From positions 62,001 through 126,000 of IMG/VR virus record IMGVR_UViG_3300043399_000297: DNA of 64,000 nt; one strand, given 5' to 3'. The position numbers were made by a program, and so were the translations under genes. Shown in pieces: positions 3,294 through 35,774 of the stretch. Numbering within the stretch: position 1 is the stretch's first letter; every line of letters starts with the position of its first letter. Below the pieces are notes generated by a model. The model searched no databases. It had not been told where the DNA came from and saw only the letters and a program-made list of their open reading frames with translations.

Positions 3294-3310
3294 TCTTAAA
3301 AGAGCAAAAA

Positions 3311-5931: not shown

Positions 5932-5934
5932 ATA

Positions 5935-7212: not shown

Positions 7213-7378
7213 TTGTAGACAGATTCTATTAGTAGAAAAGGTTCGGCAATTTGTTACTGAATACCAACATCACTACAATTTAGATCAAGTATACGGAATA
7301 GATATTGAAGCGTCATTGTTTCTTTTTGTAAAAGAATGTATTAAGGAATATAATGAAGCGAAACCTAATCGCAATTGA
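7193..7378 (+). CDS. Small hypothetical protein (61 aa)
   Basis: AAGGA RBS at about 7183 and ATG at 7193; fills the gap between two radical SAM genes and overlaps both. Confidence 0.55.
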   Translation: MSGHNPNCRQILLVEKVRQFVTEYQHHYNLDQVYGIDIEASLFLFVKECIKEYNEAKPNRN

Positions 7379-8312: not shown

Positions 8313-8320
8313 ATATTCAA

Positions 8321-11365: not shown

Positions 11366-13447
11366 ATGACTCACACCCTATACTATAATCAGCAGTTCGG
11401 GTTACCAGATCATACCAAAATTTTGTCAGATGTTTACTCTCAGTCTGCAAGCAGAGTAGTATTGTTATGCGAGCAAGAATGGGAAATTACAGGTTTAACT
11501 AAAGAATTTGTCGAGGAGTTGAATAAGAAGAACGTTCAATTAAAAATTGTCCACGGGTCCTTTAGAAATCAATACTATGAAGATTTCTATGCTGAGCTGG
11601 GGGTTCCTATCAATGATGTTGACTTTTGGGGTACCCATTGGATTAATGGAACATATTATGCCATCGATAATATATACAGACCTGAATTCTATGTTCCGAA
11701 TCCTAGCAAATTTAAGTATAAATTTATTAGCCTCAATAATCGAAGTCACCTTCATAGATGCGCCTTCATCGATGAAATGGCAGGACAAAATCAACTAGAT
11801 AAAGGCATTGTTACCTGGGTAAAACATTTGAATGAGAATAGTGATTATCCGTACAAATATTTTGACAATAGACAGGTGCTATTAGATGATGGTTTTGTAA
11901 CCAAACTTAATTCTTTTTTACTTCCCACTGAGTGGCACGAATCAGCATTGCACGTTGTAGTAGAAAGCACGACAATGGCTACCTTCATTACTGAAAAAAC
12001 TGCAATTCCTCTTTTACTCAAGAAGCCTTTCCTGGTGTTTGGTGCTATGGGATTCAACCAATGCTTACAGAAATTAGGCTTTGAATTGTATGATAATGTA
12101 TTTGATTATTCATTCGATTCTATTTCGGATACACACGAAAGAGCAAAATGTTTTGTTAATAACTTGCGCGTTCTAGAAAACTATAGTCCTCGCGAGATAT
12201 ATTCTGTTTTAATAGACAAAACAATTCGCAATTACAATCGTGCATTAGAAATTTTACTAGACAATAGCTTTATACCTGAATCAGTTATGGATTTCTATAA
12301 ATCCGGTATTAACAATGCAATATCTAGTAGAATAGGATCGTACTTAAATGTTAATATAAAAAAACTGAAATTTTATTCGGTTTGGGAAAACAATCCAGAC
12401 TATCTAACAGAAGTTAAAAATCAGGACACGAGAGAAGTTATTGTAGATAATACTGTTGAAACTAGGTACACCTCGCTGCAACATTCATCAGTGGGAGTTC
12501 AAAATCTAGCAACAGTATGCCATTCAGAAAATGTCCCTTTGACTTTATTGTCTGCTGGATATAGATTTAACAAAGAAATGCTTGATGATACTATTGCAGA
12601 ACGAATTAAAATTGTTGATCATAGTTGCTATTGGATAGCTATATATTTGGATATGTTAACTAATCAAACACACTATCAAGAAAACTTGAATCGCGGCTAC
12701 GACATTTTTGACAAAGATGTTGGGTTCGCTCAAGACATCGACTATCTTTATATCACTCTCAACAACATCGCTAAGTATCATCGCTGTGTTATGATGGATT
12801 TTCTTAGTAAATATGAACTAATTGATCAGGGAGCCATAGTATGGAGAGGTAAAAATAGGGGATATGATAATGTAAGAGAATCATTAGGTAACACTGATGA
12901 GAGTGGATATGATTTTAAATATTGGACTCCTACTAGGATGTTTCTGGACATACCCAATGATAACACTAGTACTGTAAATCAAAATCTAATACCTAATGAA
13001 TTCAAAAATTCCTTTATGCAGTTGGTTGCTGAGTCTGAACATAGGATGTTTTTTATTTCAGAGAAGACAGTGTTACCTATTATAGCTAACAAGCCCTTCT
13101 TAGTGGTGAGCGACAAAAATTTTCATAAAAATTTAAAAGAATTAGGTTTTGAGTTGTTTGATGAGTTGTTTGATTATTCTTTCGATAATATCGACGATGT
13201 TAAAGACAGAATTGAGAAACTTGTATTGAATGTGCATAGATATCGTAATCATAATAAAGAAGAATTGAGGGAACTTACTAATTTAGTAAAGCCCAAGTTA
13301 ATTCATAATAGAGAATGCGCAAAAACATACCTTAAAGAGATTATTGATATGTTCACTCCTTATATGTATAAACTAGCCTTTAGTAATATACATTCACGAT
13401 TGGAATTGCTAGCGAGGTGCGAAAAAAATGTTAATAGATTTTCCTAA
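11366..13447 (+). CDS. Glycosyltransferase-like protein with two tandem copies of the same domain
   Basis: The motif set LNN..HR, E(S)..FI(T/S)EKT..P...KPFL, LGFEL(Y/F)D..FDYSFD occurs twice. Confidence 0.55.
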   Translation: MTHTLYYNQQFGLPDHTKILSDVYSQSASRVVLLCEQEWEITGLTKEFVEELNKKNVQLKIVHGSFRNQYYEDFYAELGVPINDVDFWGTHWINGTYYAIDNIYRPEFYVPNPSKFKYKFISLNNRSHLHRCAFIDEMAGQNQLDKGIVTWVKHLNENSDYPYKYFDNRQVLLDDGFVTKLNSFLLPTEWHESALHVVVESTTMATFITEKTAIPLLLKKPFLVFGAMGFNQCLQKLGFELYDNVFDYSFDSISDTHERAKCFVNNLRVLENYSPREIYSVLIDKTIRNYNRALEILLDNSFIPESVMDFYKSGINNAISSRIGSYLNVNIKKLKFYSVWENNPDYLTEVKNQDTREVIVDNTVETRYTSLQHSSVGVQNLATVCHSENVPLTLLSAGYRFNKEMLDDTIAERIKIVDHSCYWIAIYLDMLTNQTHYQENLNRGYDIFDKDVGFAQDIDYLYITLNNIAKYHRCVMMDFLSKYELIDQGAIVWRGKNRGYDNVRESLGNTDESGYDFKYWTPTRMFLDIPNDNTSTVNQNLIPNEFKNSFMQLVAESEHRMFFISEKTVLPIIANKPFLVVSDKNFHKNLKELGFELFDELFDYSFDNIDDVKDRIEKLVLNVHRYRNHNKEELRELTNLVKPKLIHNRECAKTYLKEIIDMFTPYMYKLAFSNIHSRLELLARCEKNVNRFS

Positions 13448-14213
13448 GTATAAAAGGGCGTTTGCATTTGGTTGTAGTTTTACGAAATATGACTACCCAA
13501 CTTGGGCAGACCTAATGTTTGACCAATTGCCAAACATAGAATGTTATAACTTTGCATCGCCGGGCGGCGGGAACCAGTTTATATCTTCTAGAATTGCAGA
13601 AGCTAATGTTCGATTTAAGTTTTGTGAAACTGATTTGGTTATGGTAATGTATACTACGGTGCTTAGAGAAGATAGGTACATTGACGGCAGATGGCAAACA
13701 TTAGGAAACATATATAATCAACGATATTATGATACAAACTTTGTCAAAAATTATGTGGATCCGTTCGGTTTTGTATTAAGAGATTTAGCATTGATTGAAT
13801 TATCTATTAGGTATTTACAGTCGTTACCGTGTGATATCTTAAAGCTTAGAGCAGACAAGATTGAAAATGAAAAACCTTTGTTCGGCGACAAAGTTCAAGA
13901 GGCTATTGAGTTATACAAAGATTTAACTGATAGCTTTCCTCCCTCTCTAAAAGAAACATTATATAAGAATAATTGGGGTAAACAAATTATTACCCGAAAA
14001 GACGCCGCCGGCAAAGAATTTAAAGACGATCATCCGCTGACGATTGATTACTATAACTACTTGACCTATATAGGAGTCAATTTAAGCAATAAAGCGTATG
14101 CAGAAGAATCTACTGAAAGGATATTTTTACTTAAACCAGACCGAAGTAATGCAATGTCTTGTTTTCCTGTAGTTCAAAGCAGAAATTTTTTATCAAGCAC
14201 CAAAATGTTTTAA
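13428..14213 (+). CDS. SGNH/GDSL-like hydrolase or acyltransferase
   Basis: FAFGCSFT (block I), NFASPGGGN, C-terminal DDHP. Confidence 0.6.
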   Translation: MLIDFPKYKRAFAFGCSFTKYDYPTWADLMFDQLPNIECYNFASPGGGNQFISSRIAEANVRFKFCETDLVMVMYTTVLREDRYIDGRWQTLGNIYNQRYYDTNFVKNYVDPFGFVLRDLALIELSIRYLQSLPCDILKLRADKIENEKPLFGDKVQEAIELYKDLTDSFPPSLKETLYKNNWGKQIITRKDAAGKEFKDDHPLTIDYYNYLTYIGVNLSNKAYAEESTERIFLLKPDRSNAMSCFPVVQSRNFLSSTKMF

Positions 14214-14240: not shown

Positions 14241-15425
14241 ATGACTAAAGTAGCAATGATTGGTGTTGGAAAGTTAGGACAAGATTGTGCCGAAATTATG
14301 GCAGAACAATATGATGTAGTGGGATACGATGTTCAACCTCGCTATCCTTCTTTTACTATGTGCAACTCGATTGAAGAAGCAGTAGAAGATAGGGACATTA
14401 TTTTTATTGCAGCTCCTACTCCTCACGACCCTATGTACGGAGGAGAGACACCTACTAGTCATCTTCCCAATAAAGATTTTGATTATACTATCGTAAGTGA
14501 TATTTTGGATGAAGTCAACAAGTATGTTAATCCTAAGCAGCTGGTGGTATTGATTTCTACAGTTTTACCCGGAACAGTTCGCAGTATTCTCCGTCCTAAA
14601 ATCACAAATGCAAGATTTGTTTATAACCCATATCTTATTGCAATGGGTACTATTAAGTGGGATATGGTCAACCCTGAGATGATCATCATTGGAACTGAAG
14701 ATGGTAGTCAAACCGGCGACGCCTTAGAACTAATTCAATTCTACAAGCCATTAATGAAGAACCATCCTAGGATAGAAGTTGGAACTTGGGACGAGGCAGA
14801 ATCAATTAAAATTTTTTATAATACTTTCATTAGCGCGAAAGTATCTATCGTGAATATGATTCAGGATGTAGCCGAACGAAACGGCAATATTAATGTAGAT
14901 GTAGTTACTAATGCGTTAGCTAAATCGTCGTATCGAATTACTGGTCCGGCATATATGACTGCTGGTATGGGTGATGGCGGCGCCTGTCACCCCAGGGATA
15001 ATATTGCTTTGCGTTATATGGCTGACCGCTTGGACTTGGGATATGATCTATTTGATGCTATAATGCGAGCTAGAGAAGTGCAAGCAGAGAATATGGCTAA
15101 AAAGATATTACAGCACGGAAAGAATGTAACAATTATAGGAAAAGCTTATAAGCCAGGAGTACATTATACAAACGGTAGTTCAAGTATGTTGGTCGGCTAT
15201 TATGTAGAGCAATTAGGCGGAAACGTTAATTATTACGATGTTCATACAGGCGATCTTGATCTAGCTGAAGATTGGACAGAAGTATATTTGATCGGTTATT
15301 GGGACAAGTATGTGCAAGACATAGAATTTAAGGCAGAAACCATTGCCACTATCATTGATCCTTGGAGAAAGTATACAAACGACAACTATTCAGGAACAGT
15401 CATTCACTATGGAAATTCTAGATGA
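14241..15425 (+). CDS. ugd: UDP-glucose/GDP-mannose dehydrogenase family protein
   Basis: GVGKLG, AAPTP, STVLPGT, AESIKIFYNTF, GGACHPRD, GKAYKP. Confidence 0.88.
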   Translation: MTKVAMIGVGKLGQDCAEIMAEQYDVVGYDVQPRYPSFTMCNSIEEAVEDRDIIFIAAPTPHDPMYGGETPTSHLPNKDFDYTIVSDILDEVNKYVNPKQLVVLISTVLPGTVRSILRPKITNARFVYNPYLIAMGTIKWDMVNPEMIIIGTEDGSQTGDALELIQFYKPLMKNHPRIEVGTWDEAESIKIFYNTFISAKVSIVNMIQDVAERNGNINVDVVTNALAKSSYRITGPAYMTAGMGDGGACHPRDNIALRYMADRLDLGYDLFDAIMRAREVQAENMAKKILQHGKNVTIIGKAYKPGVHYTNGSSSMLVGYYVEQLGGNVNYYDVHTGDLDLAEDWTEVYLIGYWDKYVQDIEFKAETIATIIDPWRKYTNDNYSGTVIHYGNSR

Positions 15426-16570
15426 GTAGACCCTATGATAGTGATTGGGCTAAGCAAGAACTATATTCAGTTTGGCCTGAACTAAAAAAGTTTGATGACT
15501 TTATATATTTGATATACGCAGCAAATAATCCAGACCACCCTTTTTGGAAAAGAACTGTCGAAGATTTATGCGATGAGATTACATTGAACTACAACTCAGG
15601 AAAAACTAGATTTCTTTTTGAGTGCTTCAGTGAGACAGTGATAACTGAACATCTATTAAAAATACACAATACTATTACTAAGGTTAAAGAGTTTGTGCCA
15701 CTAGCCAAATTCTATTTAATATCTGGTTCTCCGCAAGCTGAGTTAGCATATAAGCAATTTTGTGAGAGACTACAGGTTGAACCACTAATAGATATTCTTG
15801 CTTGCTATCATCAGGAGTTTTTGTATTCAAGAAAATATACGTATGACAAGATGTATACACCCGGGCCTAAAAGTAAAAAGTTTTTGTGCTTCAATCGAAT
15901 GTATAGACAACATAGAATAGATTTATTAGAAGAAATTATAAAGTATGATTTGTTAAAAGAATCGTATTATAGTTTTACCTTACCTGAGCATAAATTATTA
16001 GACTTAGAGAAATATTATAGCTCAGTTGAGCCACACCCTTATCAAAATGTCATATCTTTAAAAGATAGTTTTCCGTTAATACTTAACTTAACCGAAGATC
16101 GTCCTATGTTTGGGTTGGATATCATTGAGGATGATCTGAAATATTTTGAAAATTCTTATTTTAGTATTATCACTGAAACTGTTTTCTATGATATGCTGTC
16201 TAAACAATCAACGTTCTATTCCTTGTTATTAGATTCCGAACATTGCGTTTTCCCCACGGAGAAGACATATAAGGCTATAGGAATGAAGCACCCCTTTATT
16301 GTGGTAAGTACTGATGGGTTTTTAAAAGAAATAAGGAAACAAGGCTACAAAACGTTTAGTCCATACATTGATGAGTCATATGATACCATTGTAGATGATA
16401 AAGCAAGATTGGCTGCTATTGTAAATGAAGTTAAGCGATTAAGTTCTATGTCAGAGGAAGAGCTAATAGAATTAACACATTGCTTTAAAGATATCGTTGA
16501 ACACAACTATGACGTTTTTAAGAATCAGACAGATTTCCGTGCCACAAAAAATGTCGAAACACTTTTTTAA
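15422..16570 (+). CDS. Glycosyltransferase-like protein (same family as 10240)
   Basis: CFNRMYRQHR, FSIITET, PTEKTYK, HPFI, GYKTF, DESYD. Confidence 0.55.
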   Translation: MSRPYDSDWAKQELYSVWPELKKFDDFIYLIYAANNPDHPFWKRTVEDLCDEITLNYNSGKTRFLFECFSETVITEHLLKIHNTITKVKEFVPLAKFYLISGSPQAELAYKQFCERLQVEPLIDILACYHQEFLYSRKYTYDKMYTPGPKSKKFLCFNRMYRQHRIDLLEEIIKYDLLKESYYSFTLPEHKLLDLEKYYSSVEPHPYQNVISLKDSFPLILNLTEDRPMFGLDIIEDDLKYFENSYFSIITETVFYDMLSKQSTFYSLLLDSEHCVFPTEKTYKAIGMKHPFIVVSTDGFLKEIRKQGYKTFSPYIDESYDTIVDDKARLAAIVNEVKRLSSMSEEELIELTHCFKDIVEHNYDVFKNQTDFRATKNVETLF

Positions 16571-16590: not shown

Positions 16591-18855
16591 ATGGAATTTA
16601 TTTTGGATTTTAATTTAACTTCTTTGGCAAAAAAAGATTTAAAGCCAAATGAAAGGCCAACTGAAGATATAGCTGACGTTAGGCATAGAGCAATGATGGA
16701 TGCCATTGCTCCCTATGCTAAATCTACAGTGCAAAAGAACTTAACTCCGGTTTACGTAGATTACAAAACAAGAGAAACTACAATGGTTCTTGTATTGTGT
16801 CCCGAGTGGAGCCCTTATATGCCGCCGTTTAGTCTTGCTAGGCTAAGTGGTATTGCTAAAGCTGCGGGCTATGAAACACATATAATGGATTTGAATGTGA
16901 AGGCATATAATGCTTTCAAGAATGATTGGCAACCAAATAATAAATTGCCTTTTCGGTTGTGGTACCCCAGTTCTAGTTGGCATTGGCTAGGACAATCATA
17001 CATGAATGATATTCATCCTGTTTTGGAACCTATATTGAACGAGGCAGTAGATAAAATTATTGAAATGAATCCAACTGTAGTTGGCTTTAGTGTTTACTAT
17101 ATCAGTGAAGAACCCACTAAGTGGATGTGTCAGGAAATTAAAAGACGCAACCCAAACATTCTAATTGCAGTAGGCGGACCTAACGTTCATAACAGTTGGT
17201 TTCAAATTCATCCTTATTATGATTATGTTATAGTAGGAGAAGGGGAGCAAAATCTTCTTAAGATGCTTGATGAGATTGAAGAGGGATGGGTACCTACTAA
17301 AACTAAAGTGTTAACACAGCCTGAGAACGAGCGTATTAATATAAATGGTCTTCCTATGCCTGATTATGAAAGCATAGATTTTAGTGAGTATGAAATTCCA
17401 AATGGCATTAATAGCGAGATTAGCCGCGGGTGTACGGCCAAGTGTTCGTTCTGCGAAGAAACTCATTTTTGGAAGTATAGACAAAGACAAGCAGTTGATT
17501 TAATTACTGAGATAGAATGGCTTTATTATAATAAAGGAACAGATATTATTTGGTTCATTGATAGTCTTATCAATGGTAACATTAATGAGTTACGCGCATT
17601 TGCATTGGCACTAAAACAAAAGAATCTGCCTATTAGGTTTACTGGATATGCAAGACACGACGGTAGAATGGATTTAAATTACTTACAAGACCTCAAGGAC
17701 GGCGGCTGCATTATGTTTAATTTTGGGTGTGAATCAGCATCACAGAAAGTTCTTGACGATATGCACAAGGGTGTAACCATTCAAGAAATGGAACAGAACT
17801 TTATCGATTGTAAGAAGGTAGGCATCTATTGTGCTACTAATTGGATTGTAGGATTCCCTACAGAAGATTTTCAAGATTATAGCGATACTATGACTTTTAT
17901 GTGGCGTATGCGTAATAATAACATAAACAATATGGGATTAGGAGTAGGATATGGTTTAGGACCTGAAACGATTGTAGGTCAGAATCCACAAAGATTCAAT
18001 GTATCATATCACAAATATCAAAATCATTGGATTACTGCTGACTTAAAAATGGGAGGCCCGCATGTTATGACTCGCGTTAAAACTATACATATGTGGCTTG
18101 ATTTTTTCAAAGGTTGTACTGAAGTTCCGATCGGATATCCTGCTCGTTTCTTTCTTGAAAAAGAGCATTATAAAATTATATTAAATGATCCTACTGTGCA
18201 AAAAGAAATGTATTACGAAAAGTTCAATTATAATATCATTCCTCCTGTATCAGACGATAATCCTTTTGCTAATCAATTGATAAATGAAATGTGGCCCTTC
18301 TTTAGAAATCTTTGGAGAGCAAGAGGTGGGTATGAAGCAGAAGTATTGTTCAACCCTGAAATCGATTTGAAAGAATTTGGAACTCAGTATGGTCCGGGGC
18401 AGTATTGGGCGACATATAAGTTCAAGATTACTGACGAAGGACAGTGGGAAGCAGACTTTGATATCAAGTTTGAGCAAGTTGATAATCCGCTAGATGACCG
18501 CCCTTACCCGCCGGAGGGACGCAAGGGTCCTTTCTATGCTCAGGATTATAGTAGAGCGCAGACAAACACTGTTAAGCGGGCCCGAAAGTTAGCTAAGCCA
18601 ACTTGGAGTAATGAAACGGGCAGAGACGATAGTGAGTTTTGGGAACTTTTAGAAGAAGAAAGAAAGTTAAATGAAACAATTGACTTCTCGTTTCATACTC
18701 AATATACTGCAACTGGTGACTGGAGTGATATCGACAGATATAAAGTTGAGGTATCTAACCAAAAGAGAGCTTTATTACCCGAAAAGGATGTTGATATCGG
18801 TAGTGATGTAGTATCATCTATATCACTAGATAGTATTATAAAAAAGAAGAAATAA
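16591..18855 (+). CDS. Cobalamin-binding radical SAM protein with long C-terminal extension
   Basis: PPFSLARLSG, GFSVY, GGPN, GEGE, SRGCTAKCSFCEE, FGCESAS, IVGFPTE. Confidence 0.88.
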   Translation: MEFILDFNLTSLAKKDLKPNERPTEDIADVRHRAMMDAIAPYAKSTVQKNLTPVYVDYKTRETTMVLVLCPEWSPYMPPFSLARLSGIAKAAGYETHIMDLNVKAYNAFKNDWQPNNKLPFRLWYPSSSWHWLGQSYMNDIHPVLEPILNEAVDKIIEMNPTVVGFSVYYISEEPTKWMCQEIKRRNPNILIAVGGPNVHNSWFQIHPYYDYVIVGEGEQNLLKMLDEIEEGWVPTKTKVLTQPENERININGLPMPDYESIDFSEYEIPNGINSEISRGCTAKCSFCEETHFWKYRQRQAVDLITEIEWLYYNKGTDIIWFIDSLINGNINELRAFALALKQKNLPIRFTGYARHDGRMDLNYLQDLKDGGCIMFNFGCESASQKVLDDMHKGVTIQEMEQNFIDCKKVGIYCATNWIVGFPTEDFQDYSDTMTFMWRMRNNNINNMGLGVGYGLGPETIVGQNPQRFNVSYHKYQNHWITADLKMGGPHVMTRVKTIHMWLDFFKGCTEVPIGYPARFFLEKEHYKIILNDPTVQKEMYYEKFNYNIIPPVSDDNPFANQLINEMWPFFRNLWRARGGYEAEVLFNPEIDLKEFGTQYGPGQYWATYKFKITDEGQWEADFDIKFEQVDNPLDDRPYPPEGRKGPFYAQDYSRAQTNTVKRARKLAKPTWSNETGRDDSEFWELLEEERKLNETIDFSFHTQYTATGDWSDIDRYKVEVSNQKRALLPEKDVDIGSDVVSSISLDSIIKKKK

Positions 18856-19439
18856 TGGAAAAGGTTGCAGAACTTGAAAAGTTAATTGCAGACTATTATA
18901 ATGCACCATATGCCGTAGCAGTTGATTGTTGTACTCACGCAATTGAATTGTGTTTGCGCACACGAAAGACATTACTTGTCACCTGCCCCAAGAACACATA
19001 TGTTAGTGTTCCTATGACATTCAAGAAATTAGGACTTAACTGGAAGTTTCAAGAAGAACGATGGAATGACTATTATCTGATTGGTGGAACGAACATTATT
19101 GATGCTGCCGTATATTGGAAAGAAAACGGATATCTTCCTGGATCTATGATGTGTCTCAGTTTTCAATTTAAGAAACATCTCAATTTGGGCAGAGGAGGAA
19201 TGATCTTACTCGACAACTACGATCAATATCTTACCTTAAAGAAGATGAGGTATGATGGCAGAATTGATGGCATACCTTGGGCTGAACAAGATATCGACAC
19301 AGTGGGTTATCATTATTATATGACGCCTGAAACTGCACAGCTTGGTATATCTCGTTTTTCTATTGCAAAGACTACTGAACCTAAGCAGTGGTCTTATCTA
19401 GATTATCCTGACCTATCTAAGATGAAGGTGTTCTCCTGA
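18855..19439 (+). CDS. DegT/DnrJ/EryC1/StrS PLP aminotransferase (short form)
   Basis: AVAVDCCTHAIEL, IIDAA, SFQFKKHL (PLP Lys), GRGGM, GYHY. Confidence 0.85.
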   Translation: MEKVAELEKLIADYYNAPYAVAVDCCTHAIELCLRTRKTLLVTCPKNTYVSVPMTFKKLGLNWKFQEERWNDYYLIGGTNIIDAAVYWKENGYLPGSMMCLSFQFKKHLNLGRGGMILLDNYDQYLTLKKMRYDGRIDGIPWAEQDIDTVGYHYYMTPETAQLGISRFSIAKTTEPKQWSYLDYPDLSKMKVFS

Positions 19440-19449
19440 GATACCTTCG

Positions 19450-20190
19450 ATGAAGTTATTCATTTTGTCTTTTCCGCATCACGCAAAATTATCAAAATTA
19501 TGTGCAAAGTTTGCAATCAATAATGTTTTAGGAGTAACCGAAATAGTATATCTATGGGATGATTTTCATCTAACTGGACAACAACATCCATATGGTACTG
19601 GCGCAAATGTTATAAATTATAGCTATTTTAAACATACTAATTTAGCCACTAGTGGTTGGATTAGACAGCAATTTGTAAAGCTTCAGCTACATTTACTAAC
19701 AACTGATGAAGATTTTTATATTCTTGACGGTGATACTTTAGTTCGTAATCCAATAGACCTAAGGCCAAATAGAATGCTAACTTTTACAGAGCATCACTAT
19801 CCCTATTTTGAATTCATTGACAAAGCACTTAGATTACAAAAAAAGAATGACTTTAGTTTTATTTCTCCGCTAGTTAGATTCGAAAGAGAAGTATTAGTCG
19901 AATTAGAAAATTATTCAAATGCTATTAACGGGTGTGATCTTTTTGAGACATTTTTGCAATGCAACTATGATCCCAGTACATTGCCGATATCGGAATGCGA
20001 AATATACGGGACCTTTGCGACACAAATTTTAGGTAAAACTTTTGAATTCATATCCTCACCCTTTACAGAGTGTTCATTGGCTAAACCAAATGGAAATGAT
20101 TTTGAAGAATTATATTTCACGACTAACTGTGATTTAGTGTTGTCTGGCTCAGAATATTTTCTGAGTGATTATTTTTGGGATAATTGTTAG
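19450..20190 (+). CDS. Putative GT-A glycosyltransferase (DUF6492-like)
   Basis: GWIRQQFVKL, ILDGDT (DxD), SECEIYG. Confidence 0.5.
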   Translation: MKLFILSFPHHAKLSKLCAKFAINNVLGVTEIVYLWDDFHLTGQQHPYGTGANVINYSYFKHTNLATSGWIRQQFVKLQLHLLTTDEDFYILDGDTLVRNPIDLRPNRMLTFTEHHYPYFEFIDKALRLQKKNDFSFISPLVRFEREVLVELENYSNAINGCDLFETFLQCNYDPSTLPISECEIYGTFATQILGKTFEFISSPFTECSLAKPNGNDFEELYFTTNCDLVLSGSEYFLSDYFWDNC

Positions 20191-21165
20191 ATGCTTAGTA
20201 AAAATGAATGGGATCCCTTGAAAACTGTAATCGTGGGTATTGCAGATGATGCAAAAATTCCAAGAACTAATATAGGACTTAGAACAGTAAATTATGCCGA
20301 CTTAACTTTTAGTGAATACCTAAGGGTTAAGCACGGAAGATATCCAGATCAAGTTATAGAGGAAGCCAATGAAGACCTATCTATTCTATGTGAATTTTTA
20401 CGAGAACAAGATATTCAAGTTCTGCGCCCTCAAAGCAACGATCCTGACTATTATAACTATTGCCCTAGAGATACTGTATTAGTACACGATGATATTATAC
20501 TTGCAACTCCTACTGCACTATCCTGCAGGAGAGAGGAGTGGCGAGCAAATAAAGCACACTTTGATATAGACAGATTGATAGTAGCTCCTAAACCCGAACA
20601 CAGTGATACTTATAACTCAGGATGTGTAGGAAACCCTGATATATTAGCACTACGAGAATATGAACCAGTCTTTGATGCTGCAAACATTCTTAGATGTAAC
20701 GATGATTTGTTTTATCTCGTGAGCAATACCGGTAATAAGAAGGGTGCAGAATATTTACAAGAGATTGTAGGACCTAGCAAGCGAGTACACACTATTGAAA
20801 ACGTGTATAGCTATATTCATCTTGATAGCACTATAGCATTCTTGCGTGAAGGATTGGTGTTATTGAACCCTTCGCGAATTAAAAGCATAGATCAACTTCC
20901 TGAAGTATTACATAATTGGGATGTAATCTGGGCTCCTGAGCCATTCGACATTGGCCACTATCCGGGATACTGTAATGCAAGTAAATGGGTGAGCGTGAAC
21001 CTACTATCAGTTAATCCTAAGCTAGTTGTTCTAGAGGAACATCAACACGCCCTGTGTAAAGAATTAGAAAAATATAACATTGATTCGGCTATGCTTCCAA
21101 TGCGACACGCTCGTACTCTGGGAGGATGTTTTCACTGCGTTACCTTAGATTTAGAACGCAGATAA
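20191..21165 (+). CDS. Amidinotransferase (StrB1 inosamine-phosphate / glycine amidinotransferase family)
   Basis: NEWDPLKTVIVG, CPRD, FDAAN, HLDST, GGCFHCVTLD (catalytic Cys). Confidence 0.9.
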   Translation: MLSKNEWDPLKTVIVGIADDAKIPRTNIGLRTVNYADLTFSEYLRVKHGRYPDQVIEEANEDLSILCEFLREQDIQVLRPQSNDPDYYNYCPRDTVLVHDDIILATPTALSCRREEWRANKAHFDIDRLIVAPKPEHSDTYNSGCVGNPDILALREYEPVFDAANILRCNDDLFYLVSNTGNKKGAEYLQEIVGPSKRVHTIENVYSYIHLDSTIAFLREGLVLLNPSRIKSIDQLPEVLHNWDVIWAPEPFDIGHYPGYCNASKWVSVNLLSVNPKLVVLEEHQHALCKELEKYNIDSAMLPMRHARTLGGCFHCVTLDLERR

Positions 21166-21186: not shown

Positions 21187-22908
21187 ATGAAACAAGCAAA
21201 AGTTGAAGTTGGTCATATGGGTAGATATTGGAACGATGATTTCAAAACTTTGCCATATGTGAAACAGGGTGTAACTAAAGAAGAAGTCGAAAACTGGGAG
21301 CGGTTGGGATATTCTGAAAATTTTGTAAAAAGCTACACTGGATCAATGTATGATCACAGTAATGTGATGCCTGAATGGATAGATAGATTTGAAAATGCGT
21401 TTGGTTTATATAAGCAATCCTACACGTTTTACTGTATGCAAACTTGTGAAATTATGCCGACGCACAGTGATCACTTCTCTACCTATTGCAAAATAAATAA
21501 CACCACGCCTGATAAAGTCTATAGGGCAATACTGATGTTAGAAGATTGGAAACCCGGCCACTATTTTGAACTCGACGGTGTTGGATATGTTAACTGGAAG
21601 GCAGGAGACTGGTTCAAATGGAGAGGAGATGTTCCGCATGCCGCAAGCAACATAGGAATAGAGCCTAGGTATACGCTACAAGTTACTGGTCTTGATTTTA
21701 GAGTCGGTCAGTTAAACAGACTGTTTTCATTTAATATACCGGACGTTGAGGAGGAGGATAATCATCCCTTACTAAAAGATATATCTAATAAGATACAAGA
21801 GTCTCATTATATGGTGTATTTAAATAACGGATATATAACTGAGCTTGATTCTATTAACCACTCTCAGGATGTTCAAGAATTATTGAATAAAGAAGGATTG
21901 CATATCTATATGTATGAACCGCTGTGTAGTTATAGAATGCAGCAGGATAATCATACTCAAGGGTTTTATTCAGAATTTGATGATATATCACCTTATGATT
22001 TGCAAGCTGAAGAACTTGATAGCATATATGTTTATGTTAGAAGAAATAATTTGAACAATGTTACTGTTCATACAGGTGATTATAATGCAGGAGATTGGTA
22101 TAAAGATTACACTGATCGAATGAATTTGATATGTGACGATTTGTTTTTGAAAACACAAAAAACAATAGTTAACATACGGGAAACACCTAGTAATGAATTC
22201 ATTTATAATTTTATATGTTTAAACTGGCGCTTTACTAAACATAGACAATTAGTTGCTACTTATCTTGCTGGGCAGTCAGGACATTTGAGTTGGCATTTCA
22301 AATCAAAGTTTGATGTACTAGGAAAAGATTTGTTTTTTGATTTAGCCGAGTGGAAAGAGAAATATCCCACAATATATCAGAGGTTAGAACAAGGATGTGA
22401 CTATATTAGTCAGCATTCACCGTTATGCCTAGACAAAAGATCAAATCGTGCAATAGAAGTGTTAGATCCTAAATATGTAGAAATGTGGCCAGATTCAAAT
22501 GAATATGAACCAGGTGTCACGCCTTCACTGTACAATCAGGTATCCAATAACTTGTCCGATTATTATTTCCACGTGTTTTTGGATGTAGTAAACGAAACTC
22601 GGTTTGCACAACCGACTGCTAACATCAGTGAGAAGACTTTCCAGCCTATGCAATATTTTAAACCCTTTGTGCTAGTTGCCCCACCTAAGTCCCTTGAATA
22701 CGTCAAATCACTCGGTTTTAAAACCTTCAGTGATTTTTGGGATGAGAGCTATGATAACGAGTTTGATCACGGGGAGAGATTAGTTAAGATTTTTCAATTA
22801 TTAGATAAGTTGTTTGCAATGTCTAATCAAGAGCAACGTGACCTTTATAATAAGATGTTGCCTGTATTGCAACATAATTTTGACAGGTATAAGGATTTTG
22901 TGTTATGA
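21187..22908 (+). CDS. Cupin/2OG-Fe(II) oxygenase-like domain fused to a glycosyltransferase-like domain
   Basis: N-terminal PTHSD..DWKPGH..PHAASN..RYTLQVTG; C-terminal LNWRFTKHR..NET..SEKTFQP..KPF..LGFKTF..DESYD. Confidence 0.65.
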   Translation: MKQAKVEVGHMGRYWNDDFKTLPYVKQGVTKEEVENWERLGYSENFVKSYTGSMYDHSNVMPEWIDRFENAFGLYKQSYTFYCMQTCEIMPTHSDHFSTYCKINNTTPDKVYRAILMLEDWKPGHYFELDGVGYVNWKAGDWFKWRGDVPHAASNIGIEPRYTLQVTGLDFRVGQLNRLFSFNIPDVEEEDNHPLLKDISNKIQESHYMVYLNNGYITELDSINHSQDVQELLNKEGLHIYMYEPLCSYRMQQDNHTQGFYSEFDDISPYDLQAEELDSIYVYVRRNNLNNVTVHTGDYNAGDWYKDYTDRMNLICDDLFLKTQKTIVNIRETPSNEFIYNFICLNWRFTKHRQLVATYLAGQSGHLSWHFKSKFDVLGKDLFFDLAEWKEKYPTIYQRLEQGCDYISQHSPLCLDKRSNRAIEVLDPKYVEMWPDSNEYEPGVTPSLYNQVSNNLSDYYFHVFLDVVNETRFAQPTANISEKTFQPMQYFKPFVLVAPPKSLEYVKSLGFKTFSDFWDESYDNEFDHGERLVKIFQLLDKLFAMSNQEQRDLYNKMLPVLQHNFDRYKDFVL

Positions 22909-23651
22909 AAAAGATAGGTTTGGTAGCTGGATGCAGCCATTCGGCAGGCTCAGAAATGGATGGAACAGAGGATAGTTATTATAATCGTCAAAATGCATTT
23001 GGCTCATTATTGTGCAAAAGCCTAGGGTACGAACCAATAAACATTGCATTGGGCGGCGCGGCAAATAGCGGCATCGCAAGAAGTATTTTGTTGTGGTTTG
23101 ATGAGTTTTATAAAAAAGATGAGATGGATGTGTTTGTTGTTATCGGGTGGACTGAAAGCTCAAGACTTGAAGTTCCGGCAGAATCTAGGCTTTGTTATTA
23201 CAACGAAGCTAATAGCAGTGCAGATTGGTATGACGCTTCTGCTAACTATTTTCATAGAATAAACTTTGGGTGGATGGGAGCAACCGAAGAAGAACAGATT
23301 ATGATTCCTATATATCAAAACTTTATGGCAAATAATCCTTCAATTCTAGAAAATTGGTCAGCAACTAGCGTTTTGCAAATTCAATACTTTTTAAAATCGT
23401 TGAATGTTAAGTATGTAATGAGCAATACTATGCATATGTTTCAACCAGACAATGATTTTACTAAGTTCTTGATTAGTCAAATAGATAAAACAAGATATTT
23501 TAATTTACTTACTGATCAAAATATGTCGTTCTATTGGAAGTATGCAAATCTAGGATATGAAAATAAGAAAGCTACATATTGGCATCACGATGAAGAACCT
23601 CACCGGTTGTATGCAGAAGAACTTCTTAAGTTTCTAGAAGACGTAGAATGA
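22905..23651 (+). CDS. SGNH/GDSL-like protein
   Basis: VAGCSHSAG, NIALGGAANSGI, IGWT...R, WHHDEEPH. Confidence 0.55.
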   Translation: MKKIGLVAGCSHSAGSEMDGTEDSYYNRQNAFGSLLCKSLGYEPINIALGGAANSGIARSILLWFDEFYKKDEMDVFVVIGWTESSRLEVPAESRLCYYNEANSSADWYDASANYFHRINFGWMGATEEEQIMIPIYQNFMANNPSILENWSATSVLQIQYFLKSLNVKYVMSNTMHMFQPDNDFTKFLISQIDKTRYFNLLTDQNMSFYWKYANLGYENKKATYWHHDEEPHRLYAEELLKFLEDVE

Positions 23652-24478
23652 TTTTGTACTGTAATGGAGACAGTTTTGTAGCGGGAGTCGAATTGGGGGA
23701 TGATATTTTACCTGAATATCCCGGCACACAAGACTTTGATGCTCCCACTAGTGTAATAAATCTGGCAAAAGAGTGGATATTAAAAACACAGAATCACACA
23801 CATCCGTGGGCGGCTATGCGACAAGAGCTATTCACACAAATTTTTGATATCGAACGCAGTAGAGCTTTCCCTAACAAGATTAGTAAATTACTTAATCTTC
23901 CTGTAATCAATAACGCATTAGGAGGTTCTAGTATGGATAGAATAGCAAGAACTACTATTGATAGCTTAATTGAATTAAAGAGAGAAAATGAGGATATTAT
24001 TGCTATAATAGGAATAACTGAGGCTAGTAGATCAGAACTTGCTAACTTCAATGAGTGTTACAATAACGAGTATTCAACTAGATGGGTAGATATGTCATTG
24101 GGTTATGTTAATGAAGGGGTAAAGCCACTAGAAGCAGTCAGAAACTACAAACTGCGTTATGAAACGGATTATCACTGTCAAATAAATTTCTACAAGAATG
24201 TTATTCTTTTACAAGATTTCTGTAAAGTAAATCATATTCCCTTGTTTTGGGTAAACCCGGGTTTTACTAATCTATCTAACTCGCACCCTGATACTGATTT
24301 GCTAAATATGAAGAATTATGCAAATCTTACTTGTATTGTAGATATGGTAGAGATTGCAAGAAAAATTAATGTTAACGTTAGGTGTCCATCGGGGCATCAT
24401 TCGGAAGTAGTTCACGATGAAGTGGCAAAAATAATTGCCTCGATATTACAGGAGAGCAGCTATGTTCAAATTCATTAA
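23648..24478 (+). CDS. SGNH/GDSL-like protein
   Basis: YCNGDSFVAG, NNALGGSSMDRI, SGHHSEVVH. Confidence 0.6.
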   Translation: MILYCNGDSFVAGVELGDDILPEYPGTQDFDAPTSVINLAKEWILKTQNHTHPWAAMRQELFTQIFDIERSRAFPNKISKLLNLPVINNALGGSSMDRIARTTIDSLIELKRENEDIIAIIGITEASRSELANFNECYNNEYSTRWVDMSLGYVNEGVKPLEAVRNYKLRYETDYHCQINFYKNVILLQDFCKVNHIPLFWVNPGFTNLSNSHPDTDLLNMKNYANLTCIVDMVEIARKINVNVRCPSGHHSEVVHDEVAKIIASILQESSYVQIH

Positions 24479-24566
24479 AAAAATTGTCAACAAGATTAAA
24501 CGAGAGATTACATACCGCAAGCGTGTCAAAGAACTACGCAAAAGAGATCCGTTCATTTACAAATGA
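24462..24566 (+). CDS. 34-aa basic peptide MFKFIKKIVNKIKREITYRKRVKELRKRDPFIYK (not in the ORF track)
   Basis: GGAG RBS upstream; the stop overlaps the carbamoyltransferase start (ATGA); fills the intergenic gap exactly. Confidence 0.75.
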   Translation: MFKFIKKIVNKIKREITYRKRVKELRKRDPFIYK

Positions 24567-26047
24567 GTTATCTAGGCATTAGCTGCGGCTTTCACGATGC
24601 TGCTGTCAGTGTAGTTGACAGTGTTGGCAATATCACCTTCGCCGGACATAGCGAACGTTATAGTAAGAAAAAACACGATGAAAACTTATCTGTTGATCTA
24701 GTCAAAGATGCACTAACGCATTCATATGGCTCTATGGAACTACACTATTATGAGAGACCATACATTAAGGCTATCAGGCAATGGCAAGCTGGACAAGATA
24801 TCGGGCCATTGAACGTTAAAGATATAATTGGCTCAGATGTATTAGATACTCTAAAAATGTATGATAGTAAGATTCATACACACAATCATCATCTTTGTCA
24901 CGCCGCAGCCGGCTTTCAAACAAGCCCATTCAATGATGCTACTGTAGTTGTCATTGATGCGATAGGGGAATTAGATACTATTAGTATTTGGCACGCCACT
25001 TATAATAAGAAAGGTAGAGCGAAGTATAAGAAGCTTTGGGGAAAGAAATATCCTAATTCAATAGGACTAATGTATTCAGCTATGACACAGAGAGTAGGTC
25101 TTAGACCATTAGACGAAGAATACATATTGATGGGTATGGCAGCATATGGCAAACCTAAATATTTTGATTTATTAAATGATACCTTTTTGTCTAATCCTGC
25201 GTATATTGATTTTAGGCAGAACTTGCATACAGGAGTAGATCAAAGTTTCTTGTCCGGTGCAGATGATATGGATATTGCTAGTTCTGCGCAAGCGTTGGCA
25301 GAAGTATTGATTCGAATTGTATTGTTAAAGGCGATGCATCTGGGAAGAAGTAGTAACCTAGTATATAGCGGAGGAGTAGCACTCAACTGTGCAGCCAATA
25401 GATATCTAGGAAGCTATTTCAAAAATATGTGGATTATGCCTAACCCAGGTGATGCAGGCAATAGTCTTGGTGCAGCAGCATTAGGGTACGGTAAGAAATT
25501 AAATTGGACTAATGCATTCTTGGGTTATGAAATCAAAGGCGATTATCCGGTTGACAATCTCATAAAAGAGTTGCATAGTAATAAGATCGTAGGAGTAGCT
25601 AGTGGTAGAGCAGAGTTCGGTCCAAGAGCATTGGGTAATCGTAGTCTGTTAGCAGACCCACGCGGCCCTAATATTAAGGATAAGGTTAATGAGATTAAGC
25701 GAAGACAAAAGTTCAGACCATTTGCGCCGATCGTTTTGGAGGAGTTGGTTACTGATTACTTTGATATGCCTACTGGTTGGACTGACTCTAGGTATATGCA
25801 AGTCGTCGCTATTTGTAGGCATCCTGGTTTATTTCCTGCTATCGTTCACGCTGACGGGACTAGTCGTGTTCAGACTGTTCCTAAAGATGAATCAGGAATC
25901 AGAAAGCTTTTAGAAGTTTGGTACGAACAGACCGGCTGCCCTATGCTTCTTAATACATCACTGAATATTCGCGGTGAACCCATGGTCAACGATAGAAATG
26001 ATGCTGACCGCTTTGAAAAACTCTATGGAGTAAAAGTATATTCATAA
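24563..26047 (+). CDS. O-carbamoyltransferase (NodU/CmcH/TobZ family)
   Basis: HDAA, ERYS, HHLCHA, MGMAAYG, GGVALN, PGDAG, EFGPRALGNRS, FRPFAP, NTSLN. Confidence 0.93.
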   Translation: MSYLGISCGFHDAAVSVVDSVGNITFAGHSERYSKKKHDENLSVDLVKDALTHSYGSMELHYYERPYIKAIRQWQAGQDIGPLNVKDIIGSDVLDTLKMYDSKIHTHNHHLCHAAAGFQTSPFNDATVVVIDAIGELDTISIWHATYNKKGRAKYKKLWGKKYPNSIGLMYSAMTQRVGLRPLDEEYILMGMAAYGKPKYFDLLNDTFLSNPAYIDFRQNLHTGVDQSFLSGADDMDIASSAQALAEVLIRIVLLKAMHLGRSSNLVYSGGVALNCAANRYLGSYFKNMWIMPNPGDAGNSLGAAALGYGKKLNWTNAFLGYEIKGDYPVDNLIKELHSNKIVGVASGRAEFGPRALGNRSLLADPRGPNIKDKVNEIKRRQKFRPFAPIVLEELVTDYFDMPTGWTDSRYMQVVAICRHPGLFPAIVHADGTSRVQTVPKDESGIRKLLEVWYEQTGCPMLLNTSLNIRGEPMVNDRNDADRFEKLYGVKVYS

Positions 26048-31055: not shown

Positions 31056-31058
31056 AGA

Positions 31059-31087: not shown

Positions 31088-31093
31088 AAGTTA

Positions 31094-31446: not shown

Positions 31447-31470
31447 TCTTTCCATACAGATAAATACAGT

Positions 31471-35761: not shown

Positions 35762-35774
35762 GCTAGCGGCTCCT

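What the first reader, a model, noticed from the sequence alone, without database searches (positions are those of the whole stretch)
18855..21165. Aminotransferase-GT-amidinotransferase submodule: possible guanidino-sugar synthesis
Seen: a short 194-aa DegT protein with its PLP lysine intact, a DxD GT-like gene and a complete amidinotransferase lie adjacent. Known: DegT-type transamination followed by StrB1 amidination makes streptidine guanidino groups. Inference: the phage makes a guanidinylated sugar or cyclitol. The DegT is about half the usual length, so it is a minimal or atypical enzyme.
Basis: partly seen in the sequence, partly recalled or inferred. Interest (0 to 1): 0.6.

Follow-up and report, generated by a model that had tools for sequence, protein, structure and literature searches.

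The report
Phage half-size aminotransferase–amidinotransferase sugar module
A freshwater jumbo phage carries a half-length sugar aminotransferase next to a streptomycin-type amidinotransferase inside a large sugar-tailoring gene island; the pair recurs in many uncultured phages and in Bdellovibrio, and probably turns an amino sugar into a guanidino sugar, a product nobody has demonstrated.

Summary
Three abutting + strand genes lie at exactly 18855-21165.

- **Gene 1 (194 aa)** is a DegT-family protein with the PLP lysine (K107) and the cofactor aspartate (D83) intact.
- **Gene 2 (246 aa)** is a DUF6492 protein with a GT-A fold and an invariant DGD motif.
- **Gene 3 (324 aa)** is a full-length homologue of StrB1 with the Cys-His-Asp triad intact.

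The short DegT is not a remnant. It belongs to a family of about 194-207 aa with at least 8000 sequence clusters, and it folds confidently as a trimmed PLP-binding domain.

It is short DegT, amidinotransferase and a small 2OG/Fe oxygenase, which here forms the N-terminus of the next gene. DegT abuts the amidinotransferase in 40 of 58 related loci. The GT-A gene is a sub-lineage insertion at that junction.

The surrounding genes point to sugar chemistry. No cyclitol-forming enzyme was found in the 244-kb record. The guanidino-sugar reading is therefore plausible (about 0.5), the cyclitol reading is weak, and the acceptor and product remain untested.

One 2025 cyanophage paper lists the two enzyme types by annotation only.

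The parts
18855..19439 (+). Short ('mini') DegT-family PLP aminotransferase, 194 aa. It is a trimmed large domain only; K107 is the PLP lysine and D83 the cofactor aspartate.
   Evidence: Pfam PF01041 at 3.2e-12. Alignment to solved DegTs. Invariant residues in A1. AF2 model with pLDDT 96. Foldseek best hits are GDP-perosamine synthase, AtS13, CalS13, ArnB and WbpE, TM about 0.7 by the query. hhalign to the window's own full-length DegT gives 97% probability.
19450..20190 (+). DUF6492-family GT-A glycosyltransferase-like protein, 246 aa, with invariant DD (37-38) and DGD (93-95). It is a sub-lineage insertion between DegT and the amidinotransferase.
   Evidence: 17 homologues, several carrying PF20102. 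Alignment A2. AF2 model with pLDDT 94.8. Foldseek hits are GT6 blood-group transferases and CpsY. Absent from the related viral loci. The same arrangement occurs in L176.
20191..21165 (+). StrB1-type L-arginine amidinotransferase, 324 aa, with catalytic residues C316, H210 and D162 and guanidinium-binding residues D94 and D212.
   Evidence: PDB sequence search: 1bwd StrB1 1.5e-64, HsvA 1.5e-38, AGAT about 1e-35, SxtG 7e-34. Invariant residues in A4. phrog_25854 at 1e-25.
21187..22908 (+). 573-aa fusion. Residues 1-170 are a small cupin 2OG/Fe(II) oxygenase (H93-x-D95...H151, R161). The C-terminal half is a paralogue of the 369-aa and 382-aa proteins and is possibly GT10-like.
   Evidence: The cupin lies adjacent to the amidinotransferase in 57 of 58 related loci, plus the S-SCSM2R locus L001. 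Alignment A5. 15 of 17 members hit PF05118, best E 9e-6. Paralogy shown. The Atlas lead to GT10 scores 0.78.
16591..18855 (+). B12-binding radical SAM enzyme, 754 aa, probably a methyltransferase, directly upstream of DegT.
   Evidence: Pfam Radical_SAM and B12-binding. NCBIfam B12-rSAM methyltransferase families, all below their cut-offs. Syntenic in 32 loci.
14241..15425 (+). Nucleotide-sugar 6-dehydrogenase (UGDH family), 394 aa, with the GGACHPRD cysteine motif present.
   Evidence: Pfam UDPG_MGDP_dh N-terminal and central domains. TIGR03026 at 3.7e-45, below its cut-off. phrog_9148 at 6e-98. Sequence read.
15422..16570 (+). 382-aa paralogue of the possibly GT10-like family.
24563..26047 (+). 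NodU/Nol-type O-carbamoyltransferase, 494 aa.
   Evidence: Pfam Carbam_trans_N and Carbam_trans_C. phrog_1601 at 1e-94. NodU at 4e-36.
3257..7212 (+). Three tandem radical SAM enzymes with an N-terminal twitch domain (488, 414 and 425 aa).
   Evidence: NCBIfam NF033640 at 306, 377 and 357 bits against a cut-off of 170. Pfam SPASM and Radical_SAM.
7353..11349 (+). A 319-aa radical SAM enzyme, a KedN5-like B12 radical SAM C-methyltransferase (640 aa), and the 369-aa possibly GT10-like paralogue.
   Evidence: (KedN5 at 240 bits, below its cut-off of 700).
13428..14213 (+). 261-aa conserved protein with an SGNH-like N-terminal G-C-S motif. This is a motif-level reading only.
   Evidence: Sequence. 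Syntenic in 26 loci. No family hit.
22905..24478 (+). Two DUF6071-like proteins (248 and 276 aa). The first has an SGNH-like G-C-S-H-S motif (motif-level reading only).
   Evidence: Weak PF19547 hits. Sequence.
26057..30604 (+). 1515-aa protein with 11 tandem repeats of about 65-70 aa (FDFSW...PPYIYxFGxQW). It follows the carbamoyltransferase in the conserved order. Its function is unknown.
   Evidence: No Pfam or PHROG hit. The Atlas lead to GT2 for the C-terminus scores 0.86. Synteny.

Best explanation
The region belongs to a sugar-tailoring island of about 27 kb (window about 3.2-30.6 kb) in a freshwater jumbo phage.

Proposed mechanism. Each step is marked as shown or inferred.
1. A host nucleotide sugar is oxidised by the phage NDP-sugar 6-dehydrogenase. 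A keto group is then made on that sugar, or on a sugar already in a glycan, by one of the radical SAM enzymes or another oxidoreductase. This step is inferred. BtrN followed by BtrS in butirosin synthesis, and Ugd-ArnA-ArnB in Ara4N synthesis, are precedents recalled from my own knowledge.
2. The 194-aa mini-DegT transaminates the keto group to an amine using PLP bound at K107. Family membership, cofactor residues and fold are shown. The substrate is inferred.
3. The StrB1-type amidinotransferase transfers the amidino group of L-arginine through a C316 thiouronium intermediate onto that amine. This gives a guanidino sugar and ornithine. The catalytic apparatus is shown. The acceptor is inferred.
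4. The small 2OG/Fe oxygenase, the GT-A (DUF6492) and possibly GT10-like transferases, the B12 radical SAM methyltransferases and the carbamoyltransferase hydroxylate, transfer, methylate and carbamoylate the sugar or glycan. These steps are inferred.

The destination of the glycan is not known. It could be the virion, the host envelope or a free product.
For: - Family, residues and fold of the three proteins.
- Tight, widespread coupling: the short DegT is found in 56 of 58 loci picked by the amidinotransferase, abutting in 40. The cupin oxygenase is next to the amidinotransferase in 57 of 58.
- Asymmetry: of the 80 best viral loci picked by the short DegT, 59 have the amidinotransferase. The others keep the UGDH-like dehydrogenase, an SDR or twitch radical SAM enzymes. 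Most of the 31 genome loci have DegT without the amidinotransferase but with SDR epimerase/dehydratases nearby.
- Carbohydrate context: NDP-sugar dehydrogenase, KedN5-like C-methyltransferase, NodU-like carbamoyltransferase and twitch radical SAM enzymes. There is an NDP-sugar 4,6-dehydratase/epimerase in locus L039 and GT10-like and GT-A proteins.
- The same set (amidinotransferase, UGDH, twitch radical SAM enzymes, short DegT) lies in a Bdellovibrio chromosome, 10-18 kb from 5 of its 11 GT2 genes.
- No cyclitol-forming enzymes in the record.
Against: - No substrate, product or activity has been measured.
- The closest characterised amidinotransferase (StrB1) acts on a phosphorylated aminocyclitol, not a sugar.
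- No guanidino-sugar glycan came up in my literature searches.
- The mini-DegT lacks the C-terminal domain and about 60 residues of the large domain, so its competence as a transaminase is unproven.
- The best NCBIfam hit for the adjacent B12 radical SAM enzyme is a RiPP C-methyltransferase family, and PF05118 oxygenases include protein hydroxylases. A peptide target is therefore not excluded.
- The GT10-like assignment is only an Atlas lead (score 0.78).
- The record is about 71% complete, so absences are soft.
Confidence: 0.5

Rival explanations
1. Aminocyclitol or aminoglycoside-like small molecule. The pair makes a streptidine- or bluensidine-like guanidino (and carbamoyl) cyclitol that is glycosylated into a diffusible antibiotic-like product, as the S-SCSM2R authors suggested when they called these 'antibiotic synthesis genes'.
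For: - StrB1 is by far the best characterised match (221.8 bits, against 136 for HsvA and 125 for AGAT).
- The DegT family includes the inosose aminotransferases, and bluensidine carries both a guanidino and a carbamoyl group (my own knowledge).
- B12 radical SAM, twitch radical SAM and carbamoyltransferase enzymes are typical aminoglycoside tailoring enzymes.
- PMC12801897 gives this annotation.
Against: - The 244-kb record has no GFO/IDH/MocA inositol dehydrogenase, no inositol-phosphate synthase and no DOI/DHQ synthase.
- No kinase was recognised in the cluster, and StrB1 needs a phosphorylated acceptor.
- An NDP-sugar 6-dehydrogenase and SDR enzymes are the recurrent neighbours of the short DegT.
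- The Bdellovibrio copy lies by a GT2-rich region.
- No resistance or export genes were seen.
Confidence: 0.12
2. Non-sugar acceptor. The amidinotransferase guanidinylates an amino acid, a polyamine, or a lysine or ornithine side chain of a peptide or protein. The radical SAM enzymes and the oxygenase would then act on the same peptide or protein.
For: - HsvA, solved as PDB 5wpi (a polyamine amidinotransferase, from my own knowledge), and AGAT are clear homologues.
- Most cupin members hit PF05118, the Asp/Asn hydroxylase family.
- The best NCBIfam hit of the B12 radical SAM enzyme is a RiPP C-methyltransferase family, and SPASM/twitch enzymes often mature peptides.
- A 1515-aa repeat protein follows the cluster.
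Against: - Coupling to a DegT-family enzyme whose best structural matches are all NDP-sugar aminotransferases.
- Recurrent NDP-sugar dehydrogenase and SDR neighbours.
- No precursor-peptide gene was noticed.
- All radical SAM family hits other than the twitch family are below their cut-offs.
Confidence: 0.12
3. The mini-DegT is not a transaminase. It is an inactive scaffold, a PLP enzyme of another reaction type, or a subunit that needs a partner, and the amidinotransferase takes an amine made elsewhere.
For: It lacks the whole C-terminal domain and an internal segment. The phage has a separate full-length DegT at 42121-43176 next to an SDR.
Against: - K107, D83, S102, T48/Y49 and the GYHYYMTPE block are invariant across 42 sequences down to 36% identity.
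- At least 8000 clusters keep the 194-207 aa length.
- The fold is confident.
- In this family a lysine at this position marks aminotransferases, whereas the dehydratase members carry histidine (my own knowledge).
Confidence: 0.08
4. DNA hypermodification. The island decorates a modified base, for example a glycosylated hydroxymethyl pyrimidine, and the guanidino group ends up on DNA.
For: Phage base-hypermodification pathways use PLP enzymes, radical SAM enzymes, 2OG oxygenases and glycosyltransferases (my own knowledge). A thymidylate-synthase-family gene lies at 39507-40418.
Against: - That gene scores 352 bits on the canonical family model, so it looks like an ordinary ThyA.
- No base-modifying enzyme was identified in the island.
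- The same module lies in a bacterial chromosome beside GT2 genes.
- The carbamoyltransferase and NDP-sugar dehydrogenase are of the glycan type.
Confidence: 0.06

Closest known systems
StrB1, L-arginine:inosamine-phosphate amidinotransferase of Streptomyces griseus (PDB 1bwd)
   Same: The alignment covers the full length (residues 4-323 against 7-339, E 1.5e-64). The catalytic Cys-His-Asp and the two guanidinium-binding aspartates are at equivalent positions and are invariant in the phage family.
   Different: The phage protein is 324 aa against 348. It lies with nucleotide-sugar and glycan genes, not with cyclitol-forming genes, and no kinase was seen. The acceptor is unknown.
DegT/DnrJ/EryC1/StrS sugar aminotransferases (GDP-perosamine synthase 3dr4, ArnB, WbpE, QdtB, CalS13)
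   Same: It passes the Pfam cut-off. The SFxxxK lysine and the (I/V)xD(A/G)A aspartate are present, and the PLP-domain fold matches at TM about 0.7 by the query.
   Different: It is half the size. It lacks about 30-40 N-terminal residues, an internal segment (about 31 residues against the window's own 351-aa DegT, about 57 against a 372-aa solved one) and the whole C-terminal domain. The family length of 194-207 aa is conserved.
Synechococcus phage S-SCSM2R ORF305-ORF309 (PQ898602.1; PMC12801897)
   Same: It has a short DegT (59% identity, annotated as AHBA synthase), a radical SAM enzyme, a GT, a small 2OG oxygenase and an 'inosamine amidinotransferase' (54% identity) in one block.
   Different: It is a T4-like marine cyanophage with other neighbours (GT2, GT25, several 2OG oxygenases). 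The authors list the genes as 'antibiotic synthesis genes' by annotation only. It has no UGDH, B12 radical SAM enzyme or carbamoyltransferase in the block.
Ugd-ArnA-ArnB (UDP-L-Ara4N) and WbpA-WbpB-WbpE (UDP-diamino uronic acid) pathways
   Same: An NDP-sugar 6-dehydrogenase is followed by keto formation and DegT transamination. UGDH-like and SDR genes are the commonest neighbours of the short DegT, and ArnB and WbpE are among the structural matches.
   Different: No ArnA- or WbpB-type enzyme sits next to the pair in this window; radical SAM enzymes do. Those pathways end in formylation or acetylation, not amidination (my own knowledge).
Campylobacter phage CP220-group 'possible glycine amidinotransferase'
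   Same: It is a phage-encoded member of the same superfamily, matched over 98-100% of the query length.
   Different: It shares only 23-26% identity. No short DegT match was found in those phages. Its function is also unknown.

Membership tests
DegT/DnrJ/EryC1/StrS aminotransferase (PF01041) | Match to the family model above the curated cut-off | tested here: met
   46.8 bits against a cut-off of 19.8, E 3.2e-12.
DegT/DnrJ/EryC1/StrS aminotransferase (PF01041) | Schiff-base lysine in the SFxxxK motif (lysine, not the histidine of the dehydratase members) | tested here: met
   K107 aligns with the lysine of 4zwv and 4lc3 and is invariant in A1.
DegT/DnrJ/EryC1/StrS aminotransferase (PF01041) | Aspartate that pairs with the pyridine nitrogen | tested here: met
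   D83 in IIDAA aligns with the D of IVDGA in the window's full-length DegT and is invariant. The contact with the cofactor was not checked in three dimensions.
DegT/DnrJ/EryC1/StrS aminotransferase (PF01041) | Two-domain architecture of about 360-400 aa with a C-terminal small domain | tested here: not met
   194 aa. Profile positions 1-30, about 98-162 and 236-360 are not matched. The model is a single domain.
DegT/DnrJ/EryC1/StrS aminotransferase (PF01041) | Homodimer with a shared active site, and transaminase activity | not testable with these tools
   Needs protein work. No homodimer prediction was run.
Amidinotransferase (StrB1/AGAT branch of the guanidino-group-modifying superfamily) | Full-length similarity to characterised amidinotransferases | tested here: met
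   1bwd 1.5e-64, 5wpi 1.5e-38, AGAT about 1e-35, SxtG 7e-34, all over residues 3-324. Pfam itself gave no hit.
Amidinotransferase (StrB1/AGAT branch of the guanidino-group-modifying superfamily) | Cys-His-Asp catalytic triad and the two guanidinium-binding aspartates | tested here: met
   C316, H210, D162, D94 and D212 align with StrB1 C332, H227, D179, D108 and D229 and are invariant in A4.
Amidinotransferase (StrB1/AGAT branch of the guanidino-group-modifying superfamily) | Open StrB1-type rather than narrow AGAT-type acceptor channel | tested here: inconclusive
   The aligned span is 13 residues shorter than in StrB1 and about 26 shorter than in AGAT. Where the deletions fall was not mapped on a structure.
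Amidinotransferase (StrB1/AGAT branch of the guanidino-group-modifying superfamily) | Acceptor specificity | not testable with these tools
   Needs an enzyme assay.
Streptidine-type aminocyclitol pathway | Cyclitol supply and activation: inositol dehydrogenase (GFO/IDH/MocA), inositol-phosphate or DOI synthase, inosamine kinase | tested here: not met
   The 244-kb record has no PF01408, PF07994 or PF01761 match, and no kinase was recognised in the cluster. The record is about 71% complete, and host enzymes could substitute.
GT-A glycosyltransferase (DUF6492, PF20102) | GT-A fold | tested here: met
   Model pLDDT 94.8. Foldseek probability 1.0 to GT6 enzymes and CpsY, TM about 0.5.
GT-A glycosyltransferase (DUF6492, PF20102) | DxD metal and nucleotide-sugar motif | tested here: met
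   D93-G94-D95 is invariant in 18 sequences.
GT-A glycosyltransferase (DUF6492, PF20102) | Match to PF20102 above the cut-off | tested here: not met
   17 bits against a cut-off of 22.9 for this protein. Eight of its 17 homologues carry PF20102 in precomputed annotation.

The most novel reading that the evidence does not exclude
The roughly 195-aa mini-DegT is a previously undescribed half-size class of fold-type-I PLP aminotransferase. Its stripped-down, open active site would work together with an open StrB1-type amidinotransferase on sugars already built into a glycan. The result would be guanidinium groups on phage or host surface glycans, a natural guanidino-glycan found in hundreds of uncultured phages and in Bdellovibrio.
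Probability: 0.2. Interest if true: 0.75.

Novelty: new variant of a known kind. Interest (0 to 1): 0.55.

Why it matters
If the pair makes a guanidino sugar, that would add a strongly cationic building block to natural glycans. It would appear on phages or on the cells they infect, where surface charge affects adsorption, exclusion of competing phages and predator-prey contact (Bdellovibrio).

The mini-DegT is of interest to enzymologists independently of the product. It is a very abundant family (at least 8000 clusters at 90% identity and at least 591 viral contigs) that keeps the PLP residues in half the usual size.

The module can be tested now, because a cultured cyanophage (S-SCSM2R) and a cultured Bdellovibrio strain both carry it.

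Tried and rejected
- **Complex prediction.** Prediction of an amidinotransferase-mini-DegT complex gave no support (score 0.00, controls not run). This is not evidence for or against binding.
- **Pfam, PHROGs, NCBIfam.** They gave nothing useful for the 369-, 382-, 573-, 261-, 693-, 360- and 1515-aa proteins.
- **PDB sequence and profile searches.** They gave nothing for the 382-aa and 573-aa proteins or for the A3 family. The cupin gave only a marginal AtsK hit.
- **DNA search.** Megablast of the region against deposited phages found nothing.
- **UGDH stopping at the aldehyde.** I considered that the UGDH-like enzyme might stop at the aldehyde, which would give a 6-amino sugar. I rejected this because the catalytic cysteine motif is present.
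- **GT-A gene unique to this genome.** I considered this and rejected it: L176 has the same three-gene order at 65-74% identity.
- **Other dead ends.** Promoter and terminator scans were at chance level. No RNA run holds the region, so expression could not be assessed and no reads were laid. Literature searches found no described guanidino-sugar glycan and no study of this module beyond annotation.
- **Host placement.** There is no psbA and no bS21 in the record, so it could not be placed with cyanophages or with the bS21 lake phages.

Full report
**Observation**

The window is part of a 244-kb IMG/VR virus record estimated at 71% complete. It comes from a freshwater metagenome. It encodes a T4-type large terminase, UvsW- and RecA-like proteins and other phage genes.

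At 18855-21165 there are exactly three + strand ORFs of 194, 246 and 324 aa, packed end to end. All three have many homologues, so they are genes and not chance ORFs.

**Gene 1: a half-size DegT**

It passes the Pfam DegT_DnrJ_EryC1 cut-off, but only in two stretches, profile positions 31-97 and 163-235 of 360.

- In alignments to solved sugar aminotransferases, K107 of SFQFKKHLNLGRGG falls on the Schiff-base lysine.
- A profile comparison with the window's own full-length DegT (42121-43176) gives 97% probability. It aligns IIDAA with IVDGA, which places D83 on the cofactor aspartate.
- The same comparison shows that about 37 N-terminal residues, about 31 internal residues and the whole C-terminal part are missing.
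- K107, D83, S102, T48, Y49 and a GYHYYMTPE block are invariant or nearly so in 42 sequences.

The word search returned 8000 scored clusters, all with E <= 0.001 (the limit of the search). The best 120 are 194-207 aa long. That search cannot see proteins longer than 340 aa, so it says nothing about full-length relatives.

AlphaFold2 gives a confident single domain (pLDDT 96). Its best structural matches are GDP-perosamine synthase, AtS13/CalS13, ArnB, WbpE and QdtB, at TM about 0.7 by the query and about 0.4 by the target. So this is a conserved minimal form of the PLP-binding domain, not a truncated remnant.

**Gene 3: a StrB1-type amidinotransferase**

Pfam finds nothing. A search of PDB sequences gives StrB1 at 1.5e-64 over the whole length, then HsvA, AGAT and SxtG at 1e-38 to 1e-33. 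The catalytic Cys, His and Asp and the two guanidinium-binding aspartates are in place and invariant in 35 homologues. The family has more than 5000 clusters.

**Gene 2: a GT-A protein**

It belongs to DUF6492, has invariant DD and DGD motifs, and folds as a GT-A glycosyltransferase resembling GT6 enzymes and CpsY.

It has no homologue in the 58 loci picked by the amidinotransferase, nor in the 80 picked by the short DegT. More distant homologues sit in unrelated phage contexts. One short contig (L176) has the same DegT-DUF6492-amidinotransferase order at 65-74% identity. So this gene is a retained insertion of a sub-lineage.

Other lineages carry other genes at the same junction. Examples are a methyltransferase-like gene in L008, L009 and L056, and the cupin in L048.

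**The conserved unit**

- In 58 related loci (55 IMG/VR and 3 NCBI metagenome), the short DegT is present in 56. The two exceptions are contigs cut close to the gene.
- It abuts the amidinotransferase in 40 of the 58.
- A small domain of about 165 aa, with invariant H-x-D...H and an arginine, lies next to the amidinotransferase in 57 of the 58. It is free-standing or, as here, fused to the N-terminus of the next protein.
- Most members of that domain family hit the Asp/Asn-hydroxylase family of 2OG oxygenases.
- The coupling is one-sided. At least 591 viral contigs carry the short DegT.
- Among the 80 best of these, 59 have the amidinotransferase. The rest keep the UGDH-like dehydrogenase, an SDR or twitch radical SAM enzymes.
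- Most of the 31 loci from bacterial and archaeal assemblies have the short DegT with SDR epimerase/dehydratases but no amidinotransferase.

This pattern is what one expects if the DegT makes an amine that the amidinotransferase optionally converts further.

**Context**

The common gene order is:
- a possibly GT10-like protein and an SGNH-like protein;
- the NDP-sugar 6-dehydrogenase and a second GT10-like paralogue;
- the B12 radical SAM enzyme, the short DegT and the amidinotransferase;
- the cupin-GT fusion and the DUF6071 protein(s);
- the carbamoyltransferase and a large repeat protein.

In this window three twitch-domain radical SAM enzymes and a KedN5-like B12 radical SAM enzyme lie upstream.

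- The dehydrogenase keeps its catalytic cysteine motif.
- Locus L039 has an NDP-sugar 4,6-dehydratase/epimerase in the block.
- The GT10 assignment is only an Atlas lead, and the SGNH reading rests on motifs.
- A Bdellovibrio isolate chromosome and three Pseudobdellovibrionaceae MAG contigs carry the amidinotransferase (46-51% identity) and the short DegT; all but one also carry the UGDH-like gene and a twitch radical SAM enzyme.
- In the isolate, 5 of its 11 GT2 genes lie 10-18 kb from the module.
- The phage record has no inositol dehydrogenase family member, no inositol-phosphate synthase, no DOI/DHQ synthase and no sugar nucleotidyltransferase. It would have to draw on host nucleotide sugars.

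**Mechanism and rivals**

I rate a sugar route at about 0.5: keto sugar, then amine by the mini-DegT, then guanidine by arginine-dependent amidino transfer, followed by transfer and further tailoring.

Family membership, cofactor and catalytic residues, fold and synteny are shown here. The substrate, the order of steps and the product are inferred.

| Rival | Confidence | Main weakness |
|---|---|---|
| Streptidine/bluensidine-like cyclitol product | 0.12 | No cyclitol enzymes found |
| Non-sugar acceptor such as a peptide, amino acid or polyamine | 0.12 | Carbohydrate neighbours |
| Mini-DegT that is not a transaminase | 0.08 | Strict conservation of the PLP residues |
| DNA hypermodification | 0.06 | No base-modifying enzyme found; bacterial chromosomal copy lies beside GT2 genes |

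**Comparison with what is known**

Synechococcus phage S-SCSM2R has the short DegT (59% identity), a radical SAM enzyme, a GT, the small oxygenase and the amidinotransferase (54% identity) in one block. Its authors listed three of them as 'antibiotic synthesis genes' never before reported in cyanophages, on annotation alone.

Campylobacter phages have a distant amidinotransferase without a short DegT match. Large lake phages are known to carry many sugar and LPS genes, including DegT.

I found no description of the half-size DegT family, of the conserved triad, or of a natural guanidino-sugar glycan. I therefore class it as a new variant of known kinds.

**Verdict**

It is right about the aminotransferase-amidinotransferase link and about the atypical DegT. 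It is wrong about the GT being part of the core, and weak on the cyclitol option. Interest is 0.55.

Noticed in passing
window 31055-31449 (+): A permuted, alphaproteobacterial-type tmRNA gene sits in the phage: Rfam alpha_tmRNA at 83 bits and tmRNA_permuted at 93.5 bits, with ARAGORN tag ANDNDFAFELALAA. This hints at an alphaproteobacterial host.
   Followed up: partly
window 39507-43654 (+): There is a second, canonical amino-sugar set: a thymidylate-synthase-family gene (39507-40418), an SDR epimerase/dehydratase (41205-42167) and a full-length QdtB-like DegT (42121-43176). The phage therefore has both a normal and a half-size DegT.
   Followed up: partly
window 26057-30604 (+): A 1515-aa protein has 11 tandem repeats of about 65-70 aa marked by FDFSW...PPYIYxFGxQW and no family hit. 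It always follows the carbamoyltransferase in related loci. It could be a target or a giant enzyme.
   Followed up: partly
window 10240-11349, 15422-16570, 22200-22908 (+): Three paralogous domains share a conserved E...SEK...PF...G(Y/F)KTF...DESYD C-terminal half. They occur almost only in viruses, and the nearest named Atlas cluster is GT10 fucosyltransferase (score 0.78, a lead only). In some phages the domain is fused to an NDP-sugar epimerase/dehydratase.
   Followed up: partly
L008 6805-7650, L009 5906-6750, L056 9163-10010: In these relatives a 282-aa class-I SAM methyltransferase-like gene (DLGAGTGVLG motif) occupies the DegT/amidinotransferase junction where this window has the GT-A gene. 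The junction looks like an insertion hot spot.
   Followed up: no
L037 8299-9285 and 12007-12993; L015 4383-5438 (-) and 10001-10981: Some phage loci carry two amidinotransferase genes, either about 60% identical copies or a 351-aa paralogue at about 40% identity. This suggests two amidination steps or two acceptors.
   Followed up: no
L091 (Bdellovibrio sp. HCB2-146, contig 1, 1858429-1875004): A cultured predatory bacterium carries the amidinotransferase (48% identity), a UGDH-like gene, twitch radical SAM enzymes, the short DegT (43% identity) and an SDR together, near a GT2-rich region. It is a tractable cellular model for the module.
   Followed up: partly
window 3257-7212 (+): Three tandem paralogous radical SAM enzymes with an N-terminal twitch domain match NCBIfam NF033640 well above its cut-off. 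Their substrates are unknown.
   Followed up: no
window 34661-37177 (+): A MoxR/CobS-like AAA ATPase and a DUF2201 metallopeptidase/VWA protein lie in a stretch with clearly higher G+C (0.44-0.46 against about 0.36 around it).
   Followed up: no
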